In this document: positions 6,652 to 39,905 of the stretch, piece by piece
Numbering within the stretch: the stretch's first letter is position 1
Layout of the letters: the number at the start of each line of letters is the position of its first letter
Assembly (NCBI GenBank): GCA_047495785.1
Contig: JBLDXI010000009.1
Span: forward strand, 1,860,001-1,924,000
Source: Lepidodermella squamata
Taxonomy: Eukaryota > Animalia > Gastrotricha
Length of the DNA: 64,000 nt
Direction: 5' to 3'
Made by a program: the position numbers and the translations under genes
The notes under the pieces: model-generated
Seen by the model: only the letters and a program-made list of their open reading frames with translations
What the model was told of the DNA's origin: nothing
Databases searched by the model: none

Positions 6652-8986
6652 GGGGAACGAGAAAGATGTAAACAAGAGGATTAACATGACAATGAGGAGA
6701 ATCGTAGTATCTTGCGCGCGAAATCCGAAGAGCGATGCGAATCACGCGACTTGGCTTCTGCATATAAGATAGCCACGCCTTTCAGACTTGATTAGGGTTA
6801 CCTGCATGAGCGAATAACCACGCAAACCACGCTCCACGCAAATAAATGGGCGTAGTGCCGAGATGACTTCAGGCCAGATGGATCGTAAGGGAAATGCAAT
6901 GTTATAACATTTTTATAGGTTGTTTACCCTATAAATCACACAGACAGTCTCAAAAACTGTGCGCGCTCGAAATTGAATTTTAAAGCAATAAACCTCCATG
7001 TTATATACAGTCGACTGCGGGGGAAAGGCGAGACAAGCGCAATGCGGAAACAATTTTTTGCTGGTAAACTGAAACAACAAGCGGGGGAAATTGTTTGACA
7101 TTCAGAACTTGCATGATTAATCGTAGCGCAACGGTGTCGTGTGGCAAACAGAATTCTAAAGGCAACTGATGGACCTTCTGCAGATGCCTAGAGGATCATC
7201 ATGCTATCAAGTGTCCTTTTAAATTGCTTTCAAAAATTTCCGGTGACAACAATAGCAGGAAGTCATTAGTAGCAGCGTGATACTGAAGAGGCAGGAGTTG
7301 AGAAAATTCTCAAATAATCAGTGAATGTAACCTTACTGACATGCTTATAATGCCGGCATTAATTATTTTAATGATGTTATAAAGGAATTATTTTCATCGA
7401 AAAATGGGTAGCAAAAATATCTGAAGAATTTGAACAACATTGTGAGTGGAATGCGCTGGCGAATGCTTTGGACCAGAATGCGTCACTATTTGCTAATTGA
7501 AAGCAATCCGTTGATTTTAAGGACCCGTTGTCACCCTTTTATCAAAATTAAAATCGCAGCACCGGCCTTGCTTTTTTTACTCGAAGCAAATCCCTGCTGA
7601 CTTCAAATACGCGGACGCAACGTAACAACAGTGCGGTCCGAACTGTCTGAAATTTTACACTAGACTGTATTTTTTTTCGCCTACGCAAATAAATGACCAC
7701 GCGTTGACCAAGCAACATTTTAAATTATATTTTAGCTAGCAATAGCAACTGACAATTCCATTTGCAAGAATCGATGAGTATTAGACTTGCGTTCACAAAG
7801 ACCTCAAGTAAGCGGCGAATATGTCTCAAGATACTCAGCATGGCGTCCGCGTTTTCGGAAATTAAATTTGGAAAATGATGGAAATGACACAATGCGGTGT
7901 CATGCTGGCTCGTCCAGGATAAATGAATTAAGAAAAATATCAAAATGCACCCCCTACCCTGCAGCTGGGAACTCAAATTTTGTTCAAATTCGCCAAACCC
8001 TTTTACGAGCCCCCTATCGTGAATCAAATTGCGGATGGCTAGCAATGGCTCGCATTTGGACAGGATGTATAAGTGTAGGTGGATTTTCGCCGGCAAGCTA
8101 AGTGTGTTTTTGTGTTGAAATTATTCTAAAAAAATGATTACATTTTGCAAAATAATGGGTGTTGCTAATTGCATCAATACGCTGGTGGGAAATGACGTGT
8201 GGCCACGGATGAAAGTGCGCACTCTCCGTCCAATTTCCTCATCTCGTAAACAATTTTTCGATTGAACAAACACAGTGCAATCGATGCCAGAGCCGGATTA
8301 GCTCGAGAAGTCAGTGGATTTTTTAGGACAGCTCAACAGGATGCATGGACGGGTCCCTAAATATTGAATCAGCCAACCTGAATCAAGCCCATTCAGTAAT
8401 AAAAATCGTTGAAATATCCAACCTCTGCTGTATTTATTCATCTAAGCTTTCTTCAGGCATTATCGCAATTAACATAAACATACGGATCAACACAAATCCG
8501 ATTCGTCATCAGCCAACTATAAACGAAATACAAATGTGGAGATTTCGGCTCATTAGGCAAGAGAGTTAAATTTAGAAGCAAGTTAATACCATTTGTTTTT
8601 CACATACAACTGTAATCCCGTATTGGGGCAAAGCCAAGAGATCATTTCAAAATGTAAACCTGGTTTAACTTGTTATTCATTTTCCAATGCATTTTTCTTA
8701 GAAAAAAGACACACGCTGACGTATATTATCAAAACGAGATCGAATTCTGAGTACAAAATCTGGAACATGCAAAGAAAAATATTACGCAAACCAAATTTTA
8801 CGAATATCCCCGGGACAAATATTGCAGACATGTATCAAGTATCACGAAGTACAATAAGTATGATTAAAATTTTACAAAATAGAATTTATCGTCTTAGGAA
8901 TTGAGGAAAATCACACCGCGCATTAAACGGAACACTCAAGAGTATATCATAATATGAAAACTAATCAATTGGTAACGACTTCAGGT

Positions 8987-11900
8987 TCAGTTACCGCGGT
9001 CTTTCCGCTCCTTGTTCGCTTTCACACGACCCATCCCGGCGAGGTAAGGCGATGAAGCGATAGGGATAGCGTTATTCCCGAGGGCGGATGCAGGTACCGA
9101 AGCTATTGTTTGCCCAGCTATAACAGGATACGGAAATTGAACTTGGGTCAGCTGAAGCCGAACCGTTGGCAGAGTCATAGGCGCAAAGCTGACTTGACGC
9201 TGCAGCGTAGGAACAGCAGACTGCAGACCAGCCGCACCGGTAGCTGAGTTATTGAAGCTGTAGCGAAGCGGCTCAGCCGAGACCGGATTAGAGGCAGCCG
9301 GCTCGTCGACTACTTCGCCGTTGTTATTTGATACGCGAACTGTCGCAACTGCGGTTGATAGGGTCTGCCGGACCGTTCTAGGCCGCGGGGTGATAGTCGG
9401 CGGCTGGTTAGAGCTCATTTTCGGCGACGGCGGATTCGCCTGAGGCCGTTGGAACGGCGTTGTCGAGCTCGAATTTGATGATGAATTGTTGTTACTTGCA
9501 GCGTTATTTGAGTTGCTACTCGCATTTCCAGCTAGGCTGTTGTTAACTTTGACCGGGCTTAAACTTCGCGTCCGACGCACGGATGAGGAGCGATCAGGAA
9601 TCGGGGAGGTGTTATCTGTAAAATATTGACAAATTATGAGAGGTTAATAAAAAAGCGATTTTAACGTCATGTCACGCCCACACGCGTATTTTGTGTATAA
9701 TCAGTAGTTGGTTATTTTTAGGGGCTATAGGGAAAGGTTGTGAGAAGCCACGCTGTTAGTCTCGAAGCCAAGCTGTTGGACGATTTTAGAGACCGACCTT
9801 CGACGTAAATGACGCGGAACGGCTTGAATAGGTTGTCCACAGATCGTCCAAGTTCGATTTTCAGATTTTCCACAATCACCGGATGTGATATTAGTTCTTC
9901 ATCGTCACTAGCTGAATTGCCAATAGCTGTTTTCACCGAGCGAGTGCTAACCGGGGGCGTGTTCCACACGGGTTTTAAATTGCTATTATTGACAGTTAGA
10001 TCTTGCTTTCGCTTGACTTGCTGGCTAACCGGATCACGGGCGGGCCAATTATACGTTCGATACACTTTATTCGAGCCCAATACACTGGGAGTTCGATCCC
10101 AATTACTCGTGCTAACTTGCCGAACAGGTCCCATTGGACGATTCCCCTCTTCATTTGCGTTCATAGAGCCCGTGGCTATTCCATTCTCTTCATCACTAGT
10201 CGATGGAGCAAATGCGAAAAATTCTCGGACTGCTCCGGAAGTTTTGGAAGCGTGACTTGAGGTACTGAATTTCAGAGGCACTCGCGCTGAATTATTTCCG
10301 CTTTGACTATTATTACTATTATTATTTCCCGTTTTTGCAACGTTATTGTTAGCGTTAAAAGAAGTCCCGCGTTGAATTATTTGCTGCTGGAATCGTTGAA
10401 GTGCGGTTTTAGATTCGAAGGCAGTGTTAGGCGGCTTAGGCGACGCAAGGGCCTGTTTCAAGGTGGAATCGAGAACACTGTTTGGGCGCAAAGGTAACTT
10501 GGGCCAATTGTTATCTGATTACACAACACGCGTATAGACATGACAATAACATTTCAAGAACGCAAATTCATCTATCAGCTTTCAGCCTAATCAATGGCAT
10601 GTGTCAATAAGGGGGCTCAAGAATTTTAGGTCATTTTGTTATGAAATTCGAATCCAATGGACATGGAATTTTCAATACGATAAAAAGCTTCTTGCTGCGG
10701 ACATTATCAGCTCAAATTTCAATCGACAAACCCCTGGTTTTTGTTCAAAATTTTTCTTAATGATTTTCGCACTTACGATGCTTGTGCAACGTGGGAGCTA
10801 AATTTAGGTTTCATAAATCCCAAAATCTACTCTTCAGGTGGATAAATGTGGAAACAAACCATTAGCATCATCGGCTTCGGCCTGTGAGTCGCCAGGGCCG
10901 AAGTCGATCGTTCGCCGCTGACCGTGAAAGACGACATTGAAGCCGTTGAGGCTTCGCAACGGCATCAGTGGTTGGCCCTTTCGCGATTTATCAAAGCATT
11001 CTATAGCCAGGTTGACCGACTCGGCTACGACCCCAGGTATGACATCGGCCAACGGGCCGACATTAGTCGACAGCGATGGATTCGTGTTAACTTCAATGAG
11101 GTACACCTTCATGTTGTCGTCGATCATAAAATCGAGCCCGTACAGTTCGAAGTAGCCGACTTTTGACGCTAGCTTGTTTTTCACAGCGCTGAACATGTGC
11201 ACGACGATGCGCTGGATTTGCTTCGTCATCGTGTTGTACGCCCAATCCCGTTCGATGCCTTTGGTCGGCGCGACGTGCTCGTTGATGTACGTGTTAAACG
11301 TGTCCATGCTCCAAGCTGTGTTTTCTTTCACGTCTTTGTAGGCAGAATCTTTCTTCTGGATATATTGATTGGTCAGATGAACAGTGACTGAAAAGAAGAA
11401 TCACATTTCGAGTTTAATTTCGAAAAAAACTATTAAAATTTGACCAATAAAATTGTTCGAACGCTAAAATGATGAAAAACAGGGGCGTAACCAGGAAACC
11501 TTTTTTCTAGTTATTGTTGATCAGAATGTGAAATTATCATTTTTTCTCAAAAGAATCCAAAGTCGAAGAGTGCCGATTTTCAATAGGAAATATCGATACT
11601 ATTGGGTTTCCGAGCGAAGCGAGAAATTTTTTGACAATTTTGCAAACATTTCCTACACGTCATATGCAATTAGAGCCATTTTCTAAAGAAAATAGGCCGA
11701 AGAGGGGTTTTTGATATTTCACTTTGGTAGTTGTTAGAACAACCAAAACAACCAGCTGGTTACGCCACTGAATGAAAAAAGTGTTTACGGTCCCGGAATC
11801 CTGAAACTTGAATACTGAAAGCTCAGGAACAAGTTCGAAAAAGTTCTCTGGTCCTGGATCATCGTCAAGCCAACGAAAACTGGTTATACATCCGTTTGAC

Positions 11901-14900
11901 CCAGGAAATTCCTTGTAGACACCCTGCAAGAAGTTAGGGTGGCTATAAAAGCTGCCAATGGGGTTTCACTGGGACAGAGGCGTATCGGGGGATAGATTTT
12001 CTCCCAAAAATCCTGTAAGCTACAAGTTTCCTATGAATCCTCCAACTTTTTCCATTTTAAACCCATTTTCGGCTTGAAAATGCTCAAGAAAGCGTCCGCT
12101 AAAGCTCGTTTCGCTCACAAATATACTTTTTCCAAGTGGTTATCAGGCCGCCAAAAGGCGAAAAGGCTGCCTGACCGCCAAAATGTTGAACATAGGGGGG
12201 AAAAATTATCAGAATTCCTGGCTACGCCACTACAATGGGCTGAGACAAATCGTGAAAGAATCTGAACCAAAATATGCAAAAAGCAAAAATCATGACGATC
12301 TAAATCTAATTCGACTTCGAAAATCGAAAATTCGAAATTCGAACATGGGATTGATTTCAAAGCTGGACCTTTTTCAATTATTCCAGCCCATTAAATTTCC
12401 GAGATTCAACTGATATTATTAAAAGTTTCAACGAGTAATATAACTTACGATTTGGGCTATCGGGGTGATAGTGATGTATTGAAAGTCGAATGTAGCCTTT
12501 GTGATAGAGCACCAGCCAAGGCGCCGTACTTGCTATAAGCATGTAGCAGCGAATGTCGAATTTCCGACCATCCAGCAGCAAAGGGCGGAGTATGTAGCGC
12601 TGAACAATTCGCGTCATCGGCTGGCGAACCTGCCCGCGAGCTTGTACCATTTTATTCTCGCGATCGTCAGCTAACGCTCGCGCTTCTTCAGCCGTTCGCA
12701 CGAGGTGAATGCCGATGCCTTGGTTGAGGCCTGTCGGTTTGCAGATCCAAATTTCGCCGTCCTTGTATATCTGGAGAAACGCCTCGCGGTCGTTTTTATC
12801 GTCTAACCGGTATGTTTCAGGGTAGAACTGGTTCAAACGCATTGAATAGCGCCGTTTCGATTGCGCCAATTGCCGGTCGTAGTCTTGCAACGAGTTCAAC
12901 AGACCGAGTTTATTCGTTAACAATTGACTGTTAGGTATGTGATTCACCATTTGTTCACCCTCGCGGAATGCTGAGTAATTAATCGAAGCTTTGATATCAC
13001 ACCATTTGAAGCGAAATTGATCTGAGTTTTTGTCGGTGATGCGTTTCCAACCTAGAGCTAACAACGGCGCTTCGACAAGCGCCGAGCCGTTGTGGCCACC
13101 GATGTAATAAGTCGGCTGCTGGTTATTCATCATGTGGACCGATGGACGCGGGGCGCGAGTTGCGGCTGGTCTGCGGCCTTCATCGGGCGCATCGCCCATA
13201 TCGTCGCCACCTTAACACAAAAATGAAACTTTCAAACTCGAAGTCAGCTTTGCGAGGCTAAATCATCGTGGCGATGATATTATATATGAAATTTGAGAGG
13301 GACTACACAGCTGCTATATACCACGAGAAGGAGATGAGGAATGATAAAAAATTTATAGTTTTTCGATCAAATGCGGCATCAACGATCTACAGTCAAGTTT
13401 TGCATGCGTTGTAAAACATTTTTAGCCGGGTGTGCGAACAATTTGTGCATGTAATATAAGAGAAAACAGCGGCTGCGAAATTGGCTCATTTTTGCGTATA
13501 AAAGTAAAATCAATGCTTCGCTGCTGTATACACAAAATCGATTCAGGTGACGCCATTACGGCAGCATTATGTAACCCCTAATAAATGCGAATTATATCAC
13601 CATAAAACAACACAAAACAGAACACATTAAACACCTGGGAACGGCAGCAGGTTGTGTGTTTTCAATTTCACAAATTGTCGAGCGTGATATTTTTTTTAGC
13701 ACAGTCCTACATTCATACGCACAGGTGCGACACATTATTGAAGCAACGAAGTAGTCTCATAAATAAGAAGCGGAACTGTGGGGCTTTAAAGTAATTATAG
13801 AGAGCGCTTTTAAACCATAAAGAGGAATGCTTTCGAGAAATTGAAAAACAATATTATCATGATTCTGGCCGAATTTAATGTCTCGCAAATCAAATGATAG
13901 AGTTATTCCACGGTTCTTACCTTGATCATAGCCGCTACGAAATCGATTGCGGCTGTAAGAATACGGTATCGGCGTTGGGGCCGAAACTTCAACATGTTTA
14001 GGCCCGTTACTAGACGAGCCGGAAGAATTGTTGCGCTGATTTATCGAGGTACTTTTTGGCCTCAAAGTCGCAGGGGCGTGATTATTGTGATGGGTATTGT
14101 GGTTAGTCACCGGGCGATGAGGTTGGACCGGAGCGTTCGAAGCTTCAGTCGACGACTCCCGTTGCTTTACATTATTTCCGGCGCCATTTACGGGTGACTG
14201 CGTGAAGCGTTTGACAAACATTTCTCTTATGTTTTGAGCCAGCGCGACGCCGTTATCAGAACCAGGATTTTGGCTTCGATTCTGAGCAAGGCACGACAAG
14301 GTGTTGCTAACCGGTATGGCAGGGCTAGTTTGTAATTGGCGAACTTTGAGCAGGGAAGTGAGGCTTTCAGATGAAGCGTCAAACGTCATTCGGATAACGG
14401 AATCAGGCGACAAGATTCGCTCGAGTGGCCGCCGAACAGCTGAGTGAATCGCACGGTCCCTATTTCGGCGGTAGATATTCGCCGGATCTTCAGCACCATC
14501 TTCCGGCGCGATGATTTTTATCCCGAAATCGTCATCGCTAGAGCTGTTTATCACCGAGCCGCTTTCAACATCGGAATAACTTGAGGAAATCGTGGAATCA
14601 GGCACATTGCCCGATCTCTTCGATTTCCGGCGAGGATGCAACTTTGGCGTAGTTAACACGGCTGATTGCTGACCAGCTGTTATCACGACCTGAGGCGTAG
14701 CTGGCGTGGCTGGTCTACTCGGGATTGTTATTCGGTACTTGACGTTACTCTCCATCTGTTGATCAGAGCTATTTTGTTCGGCCAAAGTTATCATGGAAGG
14801 TCGTGGTGATAAAAGATCGGTCAAACTCGTGTATAGTACAGCTAATGGAGCCGGTGGTTGCTGATCGAATCGCCGCCCAGTGCCGGCTATTATCGGTGTT

Positions 14901-15325
14901 AGCGAAATTCGGTGATAGTCGGGCGAGGACGGCGCTTTCTGAACACGTTTACGACGATAAAGTTTAGCCAATTTTTTTCTACCCGAGCCTGTTGAAGGCG
15001 CGCTACGAATTTTTCGAAAGTCTTCATCATCTGTCAAAAATTGTGCTGGTTGCTCTTGTTGTTGCTGTTGCTCTGTGCTGGCCGATGAACGCAAAATTGG
15101 AGTGGTGAGAACGGAACATAAACGAAATCCAGTTTGAGTGCCGTGAGTAAAATTGCCATCGAAACTTCGCGACAGCTTCAACACTTCATCATCATCAGAA
15201 TCACAATCATCAGAATTTGAGCTTTCATCATCACTTTCGGAGGACAAATAATCAATTTTCGCCAGATCGATATCATCAATAGGCATGTAATCTTCGTCAT
15301 CTTCTAGGACTTCAACTGTCGTCAT
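8987..15325 (-). CDS. TTLL10: Tubulin polyglycylase TTLL10; exons 15325-13921, 13210-12449, 11387-10860, cassette 10514-9798, 9615-8987
   Basis: TTL-domain motifs WICKPTGLNQGIGIHLV, VQRYILRPLLLDGRKFDIR, HLTNQYIQKK, FELYGLDFMIDDNMKVYLIEVNTNPSL match the TTLL10 subfamily. Phase-1 GT-AG introns join five ORF-track fragments in frame. Long low-complexity N- and C-terminal extensions. Confidence 0.88.
11480..11770. mobile_element. MITE (non-autonomous DNA transposon) in TTLL10 intron 2
   Basis: 15-bp TIRs CAGGGGCGTAACCAG / CTGGTTACGCCACTG (14/15); flanks gATGAAAAA / aATGAAAAA form an 8-9 bp target-site duplication. Confidence 0.8.
11975..12232. mobile_element. Degenerate related MITE in the opposite orientation
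   Basis: Ends CAGAGGCGTATCGG and TTCCTGGCTACGCCACTA resemble the TIRs at 11480/11770; internal CTCGTTTCGCTC is a near reverse complement of GAGCGAAGCGAG in the first copy. Confidence 0.5.
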
Positions 15326-18300
15326 CGTCGGAAATTGAAACTTCACAAAGAAATGAAGAGATAGGAGCAACTTAACGATGAGTGCTTTTTTCACAAAAAT
15401 TGAGAGATCGCAGGACAATAAAATCAAAACAAGCCGTCACATTCACGACGATGATGACATTTTTGGTGCGATTTCACAAGTCCATAGAAGTGCAGGTGGG
15501 GAGAAGCTGTCAGCAAAACAAAAAAGAAAACGAAATGAGACGCTCCTCCAAAAACAGGCCTAATATTATAATTTATGATGGTGTTATTTATTTTTGTCAA
15601 TCGATTACAATATTTTAGCTGCGTTTGGCTGAGCGCTTCTGTATAAACAATCAGAATCGCGAGGTGTGGAATTCGGACGAAATTATTGAAGCATGACAGA
15701 GTTTCAAAATTGCAGAACGTAACGTTGCGAAAAATAAACTGTGTGACTTTTCGGTGATTTAATTTCGATTATTTTTTTATCATTCACTTTCTCTCTTCTC
15801 GCGTGTTAATTTTTTGTGTCTTGGCAAAGCATCGACAAAGAATTACAATTAATCAATAAAAAGTACCATTTCGCTGATCTGAATCCAGGTTCTTGGTCGA
15901 TGTTCTGATAAAATCGATCGAGGACGCTGCTCTTGGGTTACTTTGGCTCTGAGTTTGATCAACTGTCATTACATCACCATTTTCTTCGAGTCAGTATTTT
16001 GCATTATATTATAACAACGCAACGTCCTATTGTTGACAAGGACAAATTGTAAACATTTTTCATCAATTTTTCGTAGCCCGAATTCTAGCCAAAATATCGA
16101 AACAGCATGCGAATCAATTGCACTTTAAAAAATCGTATTCGACGAGCTGTGTCGGCTGTATCCATCTCAACCTAACAGTATTAGTGAGGCTTATAGATAT
16201 GGCGCGTTAGGGCCACATCAAAATATTGGACCACCAATACCGAGAGGTAAGACGGAAACTGCGCGACAACGCACAAGTAGTAGGCTGGAATGTAAAAGCA
16301 AGTGCAACTTGAAAGCAGCTGTAAATTTGGCAGAATGACAAGAATTGGCAACAGCAAGTGGTTAAATATCTAAAAGCCATGTCCGGTTGTAACTGGTTGT
16401 AACAGCCAAATCGAGGCGATTGTGTTGAGATAGGGCGTTGCGAGGGTTTAAGTAATACCCGGCCGAGCGGGTGTTTACACGGCAAAAATTTGAATTACTG
16501 ATGCAGAGCAAATATTTATCGAGAGCGCCAAAGAGACCACAAGACACCGACACGGCGAAAACGCGCGATACAAGCGCCTCGCGCGGTGAGTCAGCTGGGC
16601 GCGGGCGACTGATACGGATAAGCGCTCATGCTAATTCCTACTAATAATTTGTATCGGAGCTCGCGTGTCGCACGTATCCGGAAAATTATGCGACACCGCG
16701 GCACATGCCTATCTTATCGCGTTATCTAGCATATCTTGACGCTAGTAATAATAAAAATAAACATTCACACACAGGTGGATAATAAATTATGTGCATGACT
16801 TTTATCTAAGGCTCGCGCTTCACAGCCGGGATAACCTTCTGTTGCGCATAACTGATTAAGCACTCGAGCGCGTCTTATCAGGCCGGCAAATTTTTCGAAT
16901 ACGACGGCGCCATTTCACACCAATATCTCAGCCGTTTGTGGCGCAACACCTGTCTTGCGCTTGGCCCGGCGCGGCATTTAGACGGCAGGGCTTTTAAGAT
17001 AAGGCTGATTTTTGTCGTGTAAAAATGTCACCACCGCGCGCGTTTTGGCGAAGCAAGAGGAAGTGAAAAACAGGGCGAGATGTGTGGAGAATATCATGCA
17101 AAAATATATGCAGAATACGAAAAACGTATTCGCATGACGCGTTCCGCGAGGAAAAGAGCACACGCACACATTTTAGTCACAGCTCGTTGAATATTTCTCA
17201 CAAAGCGCGAGATGTTTGAGGCCGGGGTTTTGATATAAATACTCATGTAATAATATATATTGGTAATAGCCTTATTTGGCGATCTTGACTAAATACTTGA
17301 CAAACGACAAAAGCGTTGGTACGTGTCGGTGTCGGGCAGAACCAGACTTGTCGTATGCGGGTAGGTAGGTATAATATCACAGCATACTGCGTGCCTGTGT
17401 ATGATACATCGAGAAAAGAGAAGACCACGAGATGTCTTTTTGTCGCCCAAGTACCTGCGCTCTTCGCCGCGTCGGCTTTCTCTTTGTGCATTATAGTGAG
17501 TGTTAATAAAGAAATAAGGGTTGTGCGTGATAGACTATTTGACTAGGGCGACAAACTCCTTATACAGCGGTTATACATGTACTTATTACCTGCTTTTCGT
17601 AGGGAAGAAAATAGCTCCATAACGTATATATTTATACCAGCTATGATGTATGCGAAAATAGCCAAAAGCAAAAGTCGCGAGTCTAAAAACGCAATAATGC
17701 GCTACTCAGATATACCTATGTCGCCAAGCCATGCGCGTGTATATAAATTGTTATAAAGGCGGAATAATTCTCTGTTGACTGTGTTACTTTAATGTGTTAG
17801 CTAATAACCGCCCTAATTTTGTATTCATGCCACCTGGAAACGAATGCCAAGACGAAAAGCACCTTCCATTACCACCGCAACCACTACTACCGCCGTATTA
17901 GCTGCCCGCTGTAAATAGCTATGGCATGCTAGAATTATTGCTAGATGTATCACATCCATCCACAACACGTCAAAAAGCGCACTAGTCTGACCGGCTGTCT
18001 CCATTGGTCGCGCGCCTGCATCCCAGATATTCGCGTCAAACGTAATCACGATGTGGCAAAAAAGCGTGGAAACGCATATCAATGGCTATAGATATACCAG
18101 TGGAATTTTTCTTTATAGCCATTTTTCACGGTGACATAACACATAGCACTATAATACCTGTTTGAAATGTCTGAAGGAAGGGCGGCGCACTATGATTTTT
18201 TTGCCAACTCGCACCAGCACTTGCTTGTAGTTTTTGGGCGCTCATGCTTTCAGATGATAGCATGAAGCGTGGCACGTCGCACAGCCATATGGGTGGTTGT

Positions 18301-39507: not shown

Positions 39508-39905
39508 CCGTCAACTGGGGTGACTTTGACGTACCAAATTGGGGTGACTTTAGTGTACCAAAAATCAAAGATGGTAAGGTAAATACCCCGCGAGTGGGGC
39601 ACCGTTGGATAGCGTGGAGGAAATGCAGTCTGAAAAATGGCATACGATTTTAATTTTGATCAGACGGCTTCAGTCACCAAAGTTTTAATAAAAATAGGTA
39701 TCAACTTTTCGTAATTTTCCCAAAACTTCACGTGCCATTATATGGCCTTAGATGGGTTGCATTGATGTGCATTGCACACATTCAGGCTGGCCTTTCCTTG
39801 GGCTATCCAACGGTACCCTACCATGTTTGATTTTTGGTACGCCAAAGTCACCCCATTTCGGTACGTCAAAGTCACCCCACTGCCCAAAGTCACCCCAGTT
39901 GACCG
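39508..39905. mobile_element. MITE with long TIRs, Tc1/mariner-pogo-like
   Basis: ~120-bp imperfect inverted repeats starting CCGTCAACTGGGGTGACTTTG / ending CAAAGTCACCCCAGTTGACCG, with repeated GGGGTGACTTT subunits; TA on the right flank, TG on the left. Confidence 0.88.

What the first reader, a model, noticed from the sequence alone, without database searches (positions are those of the whole stretch)
9666..10544. Long-range duplex buries the 3' splice site of a 717-nt cassette exon in TTLL10
Seen: on the minus-strand pre-mRNA, the last 30 nt of intron 3, GUCAUGUCUAUACGCGUGUUGUGUAAUCAG (10544-10515, including the AG), pair over all 30 positions with CUGAUUAUACACAAAAUACGCGUGUGGGCGUGACAUGAC (9704-9666) in the next intron, ~810 nt away. 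Bulges fall only on the downstream arm, and the three non-Watson-Crick positions are all G-U on the sense strand (A-C on the other strand). The enclosed exon (10514-9798, donor GAAG|GTCGGT) is phase 1-1, has a poor pyrimidine tract, and both it and the next exon start ATAAC, so skipping keeps the frame; read-through of its donor stops at 9718. Inference: the duplex loops out a 239-aa Asn/Ser-rich segment of the glycylase tail; it is also a possible ADAR substrate at the acceptor A.
Basis: partly seen in the sequence, partly recalled or inferred. Interest (0 to 1): 0.78.

Follow-up and report, generated by a model that had tools for sequence, protein, structure and literature searches.

The report
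Intron helix bracketing a TTLL10 exon
Two intron stretches on either side of one large exon of a tubulin-modifying enzyme gene (TTLL10) can pair into a strong RNA helix in this small invertebrate. A related species has its own, differently built helix at the same exon, so the pairing is probably functional, most likely making that exon optional, but no RNA data could be reached to show it.

Summary
On the minus (sense) strand, the last 30 nt of the intron before exon 10514-9798 pair over all 30 positions with 9704-9666 in the next intron. The energy is -43.6 kcal/mol on the sense strand and -27.7 on the antisense strand. A window-wide pairing scan scores it 59; 60 shuffled windows reached at most 37-47. 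Both arms are single-copy in the 121-Mb genome, so they are not transposon ends.

The gene is a TTLL10-type polyglycylase. The enclosed 717-nt exon is a real coding exon in phase 1-1 with weak splice sites.

New evidence comes from a related species found on ENA metagenome contigs. It has the orthologous 654-nt exon, also phase 1-1, and its two flanking introns also form that locus's top sense-strand helix (18-bp core, -30.9 kcal/mol; 0 of 300 shuffles reach it). The introns of the two species cannot be aligned. In the relative the helix lies 36 nt upstream of the acceptor AG, so "looping out" is the shared feature and the "buried acceptor" is specific to this species.

No transcript evidence could be reached, so alternative use of the exon is inferred. 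A role in making a circular RNA remains a rival. This is a new member of a known kind. Earlier notes of this scan describe similar exon-bracketing helices elsewhere in the same genome.

The parts
10515..10544 (-). 5' arm of the helix: last 30 nt of the upstream flanking intron, including the acceptor AG (10516-10515)
   Evidence: Sequence read. All 30 nt pair in RNAduplex. Unique in the genome at up to 3 mismatches and with a 141-nt query.
9666..9704 (-). 3' arm of the helix in the downstream flanking intron, 93 nt after the donor and 50 nt before the next acceptor
   Evidence: Unique in the window and in the genome. No competing partner stronger than -24 kcal/mol in neighbouring exons or introns.
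9798..10514 (-). Bracketed coding exon: 717 nt, phase 1-1, 239 codons. It encodes a basic (net +9), Asn/Ser-rich, low-complexity tail segment. Donor is GAAG|GTCGGT and the pyrimidine tract is weak.
   Evidence: Open frame. Single copy. Orthologous to the 654-nt exon of the relative (blastp 3e-10; alignment). No Pfam domain.
10515..10859 (-). Upstream flanking intron, 345 nt (donor AATG|GTTTGT)
   Evidence: with frame arithmetic on the ORFs. The orthologous intron in the relative is 119 nt.
9616..9797 (-). Downstream flanking intron, 182 nt (acceptor TTTTACAG|ATAAC)
   Evidence: The orthologous intron in the relative is 173 nt.
10860..11387 (-). Exon B: C-terminal half of the TTL (ATP-grasp) domain
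   Evidence: Pfam TTL 6.8e-16. 71% identical to P0160 of the relative.
12449..13199 (-). Exon A: starts at the ATG at 13199 and holds the N-terminal half of the TTL domain. It is followed by a 1061-nt intron.
   Evidence: Pfam TTL 7.4e-30. 77% identical to the relative. Best hits elsewhere are named polyglycylase TTLL10.
8987..9615 (-). Exon D: last coding exon, a basic tail with several strongly conserved blocks; stop codon at 8989-8987
   Evidence: 39% identical over 97% of its length to P0159 of the relative. Conserved blocks shown.

Best explanation
A selected intron-to-intron RNA helix brackets the 717-nt tail exon of a TTLL10 polyglycylase gene and promotes its in-frame skipping. The 5' arm is the last 30 nt of the upstream intron and is transcribed first. 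About 810 nt later the 3' arm emerges in the next intron. If the weak acceptor at 10515 has not yet been committed by then, the arms zip into a 30-bp helix. That helix hides the pyrimidine tract and the AG, and loops out the exon. It also brings the donor at 10860 close to the acceptor at 9615: the effective intron is about 365 nt here and about 125 nt in the relative. Splicing from 10860 to 9615 then removes 239 codons and keeps the frame. The result would be two enzyme isoforms, with or without a basic, disordered, fast-evolving tail segment, both keeping the conserved final tail exon. Shown: the helix, its rarity, its strand specificity, its single-copy status, the gene model, and an independent helix at the orthologous exon in a related species. 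Inferred: that the helix forms in vivo, that the exon is alternative, and the kinetic competition.
For: The helix is strong and rare and appears in the MFE and centroid of the whole pre-mRNA stretch. All G-U pairs favour the sense strand. It is single-copy in 121 Mb. Neither arm has a competing partner. Both splice sites of the exon are weak and the phase is 1-1. The related species keeps the exon (654 nt, phase 1-1). Its flanking introns form a helix with an 18-bp core at -30.9 kcal/mol. That helix scores 42 against 21.1 +/- 3.1 (maximum 32, 0 of 300 shuffles), ties for the top sense-strand score over the 20-kb locus, and is present in the MFE and centroid. The introns and arms of the two species are not alignable, so pairing has been kept or regained while the sequence turned over. 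In the relative these two introns (119 and 173 nt) are two to three times longer than the roughly 55-nt first intron. Published work links looped-out exons to lower inclusion (PMC8052449; PMC2724269).
Against: No RNA evidence of any kind was found. There is only one comparator species and no alignable covariation. In the relative the helix does not cover the AG, so the two species may not share one mechanism. The locus-wide significance in the relative is modest on its own (11 of 100 shuffled loci reach 42). From my own knowledge of classic work (Eperon et al. 1988), splice-site-masking hairpins with loops of more than about 100 nt often fail in vivo, because splicing factors bind first.
Confidence: 0.42

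Rival explanations
1. The helix drives back-splicing. Pairing of the flanking introns brings the exon's donor (9798) next to its own acceptor (10514), producing a 717-nt single-exon circular RNA (654 nt in the relative). The skipped linear mRNA may or may not be a by-product.
For: Reverse-complementary matches in the two introns flanking one long exon are the standard cis signal for exon circularization (PMC8052449; reviews listed). From my own knowledge, repeats of 30-40 nt are sufficient, and single-exon circles typically come from unusually long exons. The geometry in the relative fits well, with arms 36 nt from the acceptor and 78 nt from the donor. A helix is present in both species.
Against: In the window species the helix contains the AG and the whole pyrimidine tract of the acceptor that back-splicing would need, so the paired state should block that reaction. 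No back-splice reads are available.
Confidence: 0.15
2. The helix is a neutral relic. A small local inverted duplication or a chance complementarity has no effect on RNA processing, and the exon is constitutive.
For: No transcript evidence for skipping was found. The gapless 19-bp core alone is matched by 4 of 20 shuffled windows. The arms show no sequence conservation between the species.
Against: The full gapped helix lies far outside the null (59 against a maximum of 47 window-wide; 0 of 300 intron against intron). Every non-Watson-Crick position is G-U on the sense strand, which leaves the antisense strand at score 21. A second, unrelated helix joins the same two introns in the relative (0 of 300 shuffles reach it; my Gumbel extrapolation from those shuffles gives a chance of roughly 1e-4). 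That is an unlikely coincidence without selection.
Confidence: 0.23
3. The arms are terminal inverted repeats of a transposon that carried or framed the exon.
For: The layout is an inverted repeat of 30-39 nt flanking an 880-bp segment.
Against: The arms and their 125-141-nt surroundings occur once in the 121-Mb genome, and the enclosed protein segment occurs once. I saw no target-site duplication at the arm ends. The segment is an in-frame exon with an orthologue in the relative.
Confidence: 0.02
4. The helix is functional in some other way. It could be an ADAR editing substrate (for example at the acceptor A), a platform for a dsRNA-binding protein, or a device that orders intron removal or helps inclusion.
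For: The 30-bp duplex is long enough for ADAR (my own knowledge). The genome encodes an A_deamin-domain protein. Conservation of the helix says only that pairing matters, not what it does.
Against: No dsRNA-binding domain was found in the three upstream open reading frames scanned (two of them adjacent to the A_deamin ORF), so it may be ADAT1. In the relative the AG lies outside the helix, so editing of the acceptor cannot be the shared function.
Confidence: 0.18

Closest known systems
[quoted passage not shown] 2009, PMC2724269; human conserved complementary regions, Kalmykova et al. 2021, PMC8052449)
   Same: Complementary segments sit in the two introns flanking one exon, hundreds of nucleotides apart. 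Pairing is stronger than chance and is present in a related species. The expected effect is lower exon inclusion.
   Different: Here conservation means the helix exists in both species with unrelated sequence, not alignable boxes with compensatory changes. The host is a probable gastrotrich with mostly very short introns. No splicing data exist.
Splice-site sequestration by RNA secondary structure (from my own knowledge: Solnick 1985; Eperon et al. 1988; hnRNP A1 exon 7B; tau exon 10)
   Same: In the window species the AG and the pyrimidine tract of the acceptor lie inside the helix.
   Different: The partner is 810 nt away, across the exon, rather than in a local hairpin. In the relative the acceptor is not sequestered.
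Flanking reverse-complementary matches that drive exon circularization (from my own knowledge: Sry; Alu pairs, Zhang et al. 2014; Liang and Wilusz 2014; C. elegans, Ivanov et al. 2015)
   Same: Short inverted matches of 18-30 bp lie in both introns around a single long exon of 650-720 nt.
   Different: One arm overlaps the acceptor that back-splicing would use. No back-splice junction has been seen.
Docking-site/selector-site competition (from my own knowledge: Dscam1, 14-3-3zeta, srp) and earlier notes on this genome (s1-411488, s1-407781, s1-422728)
   Same: Intron-to-intron pairing decides which exons are joined. Other agents report several such helices in this same genome.
   Different: There is a single exon and a single helix. 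I found no competing partner, so there is no mutually exclusive choice.

Membership tests
Exon-looping long-range intronic helix (structure-mediated exon skipping) | Complementary segments in the two introns that flank the exon | tested here: met
   Arms at 10544-10515 and 9704-9666. In the relative, L006 10587-10612 and 11381-11408.
Exon-looping long-range intronic helix (structure-mediated exon skipping) | Pairing stronger than chance and not due to repeats | tested here: met
   Window-wide score 59 against null maxima of 37-47. Intron against intron, 0 of 300 shuffles in both species. Single-copy.
Exon-looping long-range intronic helix (structure-mediated exon skipping) | Evolutionary support: conserved pairing or compensatory substitutions | tested here: inconclusive
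   A helix links the same two introns in the one available relative. The introns and arms are not alignable, so no compensatory changes can be counted.
Exon-looping long-range intronic helix (structure-mediated exon skipping) | The exon is alternatively included (both junction sets observed) | not testable with these tools
Exon-looping long-range intronic helix (structure-mediated exon skipping) | Disrupting and then restoring the pairing changes inclusion | not testable with these tools
   Needs a minigene or genome-editing experiment.
circRNA-forming exon with flanking complementary sequences | Reverse-complementary matches in both flanking introns | tested here: met
circRNA-forming exon with flanking complementary sequences | Both splice sites of the exon remain accessible when the introns are paired | tested here: not met
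   In the window species the AG and the pyrimidine tract are inside the helix. The feature is met in the relative, where the arm ends 36 nt upstream of the AG.
circRNA-forming exon with flanking complementary sequences | Back-splice junction reads | not testable with these tools
   No RNA reads are available.
Transposon with terminal inverted repeats (MITE-like) | Multiple copies with the same ends; target-site duplication | tested here: not met
   One copy only in 121 Mb. No direct duplication abutting the arms.
TTLL10 polyglycylase | TTL/ATP-grasp domain, with closest relatives being TTLL10 rather than other TTLLs | tested here: met
   Pfam TTL on both exons. The best full-library hits with source names (P0003-P0005 and P0010, with cluster members of P0006) are mollusc proteins named polyglycylase TTLL10, at 57-60% identity; the annelid and nemertean hits (P0009, P0011) are unnamed or uncharacterized. 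Other TTLL genes in the same genome are only 30-34% identical.
TTLL10 polyglycylase | Glycine-chain elongation activity on tubulin | not testable with these tools
   Needs a biochemical assay.
ADAR editing substrate | dsRNA of about 20-30 bp or more, and an ADAR (deaminase plus dsRNA-binding domain) in the genome | tested here: inconclusive
   A 30-bp duplex is present. An A_deamin ORF was found, but no dsRBD in the three upstream open reading frames scanned, two of them adjacent to it. A-to-G mismatches are not testable.

The most novel reading that the evidence does not exclude
A tubulin-code enzyme carries an RNA-structure-programmed isoform switch that has been maintained by turnover: each gastrotrich lineage rebuilds a different intron-to-intron helix around the same fast-evolving, basic tail exon of TTLL10. 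The polyglycylase would then be made with or without this segment according to the race between transcription and splice-site commitment. The looped-out exon might additionally be released as a circular RNA.
Probability: 0.3. Interest if true: 0.55.

Novelty: new member of a known kind. Interest (0 to 1): 0.45.

Why it matters
Exon-looping helices are well documented in flies and mammals, usually through alignable, co-varying boxes. Here two species that share no alignable intron sequence each have a top-ranking helix around the same exon. That pattern points to selection on pairing itself. The genome has mostly tiny introns and belongs to a phylum with almost no splicing literature. If RNA data confirm skipping, the locus would be a compact, easily mutated model of about 1.2 kb for testing kinetic competition between acceptor commitment and long-range pairing. 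It would also show that the non-catalytic tail of a polyglycylase is modular. If the exon proves constitutive, the recurrence of the helix would still need an explanation.

Tried and rejected
Whole-window RNAduplex scans timed out.

RNAduplex on 60-nt arms does not discriminate, because hundreds of pairs fall below -40 kcal/mol.

A linear-gap pairing score grew with length and was useless.

The gapless core score of 48 is matched by 4 of 20 shuffled windows, so it is not significant on its own. The affine-gap score was used instead.

The transposon reading was rejected on copy number.

Homology of the arms or introns between the two species was tested and is not significant. A shared GUCAU-GUC motif is not in a consistent pairing register.

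A competing or switch helix was looked for and not found.

No Rfam family matches in 8900-13300.

The cassette has no Pfam domain and no relatives in the word search. Its tail shows no similarity to the 166 TTLL proteins retrieved.

The Mya arenaria TTLL10 isoforms differ only at the N-terminus, so they give no precedent for a tail cassette.

The JGI metagenome scan found no closer relatives; the best was 45% identical.

The recent TTLL10 biochemistry preprint says nothing about tail regions or isoforms.

Full report
**What is there**

Read on the minus strand, the window holds a TTL-family gene.
- Exon A runs from the ATG at 13199 to 12449 and is followed by a 1061-nt intron.
- Exon B is 11387-10860, followed by a 345-nt intron.
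- The exon in question is 10514-9798 (717 nt), followed by a 182-nt intron.
- The last coding exon is 9615-8987.

Exons A and B carry the two halves of the Pfam TTL domain (7.4e-30 and 6.8e-16). A full-library HMMER search with exon A found 107 proteins at E of 1e-30 or better. Its best hits that carry a source name, at 57-60% identity, are mollusc proteins called polyglycylase TTLL10; the annelid and nemertean hits at 55-56% are unnamed or uncharacterized. Other TTLL genes in the same genome are only 30-34% identical. The TTLL10 label is therefore supported. The contig is not human; earlier notes of this scan take the genome for a gastrotrich, which I did not test.

**The observation**

RNAduplex pairs all 30 nt of the 5' arm at -43.6 kcal/mol, against -17.5 +/- 3.5 for shuffled arms. 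The favoured register has one 4-nt bulge on the downstream arm and 13 A-U, 11 G-C and 6 G-U pairs. The antisense strand gives only -27.7 kcal/mol. The helix appears in the MFE and the centroid of the entire 1271-nt stretch.

**Is it more than chance?**

Several first attempts were uninformative, and the gapless core alone is not significant. An affine-gap pairing score in the local regime settles the question. The helix scores 59 on the sense strand, while the best scores of 60 Markov-shuffled windows range from 37 to 47. Only a foldback element at 39.5-39.9 kb scores higher, and on the plus strand this pair does not reach the listed top 12. Restricted to the two introns, the score is 59 against 22.7 +/- 3.1 (maximum 37, 0 of 300); the antisense score is 21.

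**Is it a repeat?**

No. The 30-mer occurs once in the 121-Mb genome at up to three mismatches. The 125-141-nt surroundings of each arm occur once. The encoded segment occurs once.

**Is the exon real?**

Its frame is open for 257-266 codons and fits the phases of both neighbouring exons. All three possible junction codons read GAT, so skipping keeps the frame. The acceptor has a poor pyrimidine tract and the donor is GTCGGT. The segment is basic (net +9), Asn/Ser-rich and has no Pfam domain.

**A related species**

Exon-wise searches found no same-species cDNA. They did find ORFs 71% and 39% identical to exons B and D on ENA metagenome contigs, and these were fetched as L006-L009.

L006 carries the whole orthologous gene:
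- Exon A is 77% identical, followed by a first intron of about 55 nt.
- Exon B ends at 10529, followed by a 119-nt intron.
- A 654-nt exon lies at 10649-11302, followed by a 173-nt intron.
- The last exon starts at 11476.

The 654-nt exon is the orthologue of the bracketed exon. Blastp gives 3e-10, with a shared WP start, a PLK[FY]...AVREFF..APS block and an FKPFRV end, and the phase is again 1-1. It is much less conserved than the last exon, which keeps long identical blocks.

**The key result**

In the relative the same two introns also pair. L006 10587-10612 pairs with 11381-11408 through an 18-bp contiguous core with one G-U, at -30.9 kcal/mol. This helix ties for the best sense-strand score in the 20-kb locus. 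It scores 42 against 21.1 +/- 3.1 for shuffled introns (maximum 32, 0 of 300). It is present in the MFE and centroid of the 971-nt stretch.

The introns of the two species do not align, and the arms show no significant similarity. L006, L007 and L008 are identical here and give no polymorphism. So the pairing recurs while the sequence does not. That is the pattern expected if pairing itself is selected and rebuilt.

The geometry differs between the species. In the relative the 5' arm ends 36 nt upstream of the AG, so only the window species buries its acceptor.

**Mechanism**

I take the shared feature, a helix that encloses the exon, as the functional one, and exon skipping as its most likely output (confidence 0.42).
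- In the window species the paired state hides the AG and the pyrimidine tract, and shortens the path from donor 10860 to acceptor 9615 to about 365 nt. The equivalent path in the relative is about 125 nt.
- The 5' arm is made about 810 nt before its partner, so the outcome would depend on whether the weak acceptor is committed first. This kinetic part is inference.
- Neither arm has a competing partner stronger than -24 kcal/mol, so this is not a docking/selector switch.
- Published surveys link looped-out exons to lower inclusion and flanking pairings to circular RNAs (PMC8052449; PMC2724269).

**Rivals**

- Back-splicing to a 717-nt circle fits the relative's geometry. It conflicts with the masked acceptor in the window species (0.15).
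- A neutral relic is hard to reconcile with the sense-only G-U pattern and with the second species (0.23).
- A transposon origin is essentially excluded (0.02).
- Other functions, including ADAR editing, remain open (0.18). The genome has an A_deamin ORF, but I saw no dsRNA-binding domain in the three upstream open reading frames scanned.

**Limits**

- No RNA evidence was reached.
- Only one comparator species exists in the collections searched.
- The numbering 'intron 3' is uncertain. Exon A has a conserved ATG with an AG 11 nt upstream. Earlier notes report spliced-leader trans-splicing in this genome. The conserved upstream 556-aa ORF may therefore be a separate gene.

**Verdict**

This is a new member of a known kind, long-range intronic pairing around an exon, with cross-species support from an independent helix in a second species but no transcript data. 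Interest is 0.45.

Noticed in passing
window 39510-39903: A foldback-type element of about 390 bp. Its long inverted arms (66 nt at 91% complementarity, plus nested pairs) are built from 24-nt subrepeats. It is the strongest pairing in the window on both strands and lies just upstream of the nuclear-receptor gene noted by another agent.
   Followed up: partly
window 13757-15427 (-) and L006 7370-8920: A 556-aa low-complexity ORF directly upstream of the TTLL10 start is conserved in position and weakly in sequence in the relative (29% identity, E 2e-27). It has no Pfam domain. Whether it is a 5' exon of TTLL10 or a separate, possibly operon-like, upstream gene is unresolved.
   Followed up: partly
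window 11388-12448 (-) versus L006 about 9948-10001: The first TTLL10 intron is 1061 nt in the window species but only about 55 nt in the relative, so a large lineage-specific intron expansion has occurred. I did not examine its content.
   Followed up: no
window 8987-9615 (-) and L006 11476-12176: The last tail exon keeps several long conserved blocks (SVRRTRSLSPVK, RPRTVRQTLST, LTQ.QFPYPVIAGQT, KERKDRGN) between the two species. It has no similarity to the mollusc TTLL10 tails retrieved, so it looks like a lineage-specific functional tail.
   Followed up: partly
P0001 (Logan contig, 904 aa): The top-scoring library hit is a protein from another organism with two complete TTLL10-like TTL domains in tandem on one transcript-sized contig.
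   Followed up: no
G000:C38:75814-76797 (L042 4557-5846) and G000:C13:164004-164707: Two loci have adenosine-deaminase (A_deamin) domains. The first is a complete 329-position match. No dsRNA-binding domain was seen in the three upstream open reading frames scanned (two of them adjacent), so ADAR versus ADAT1 is undecided.
   Followed up: partly
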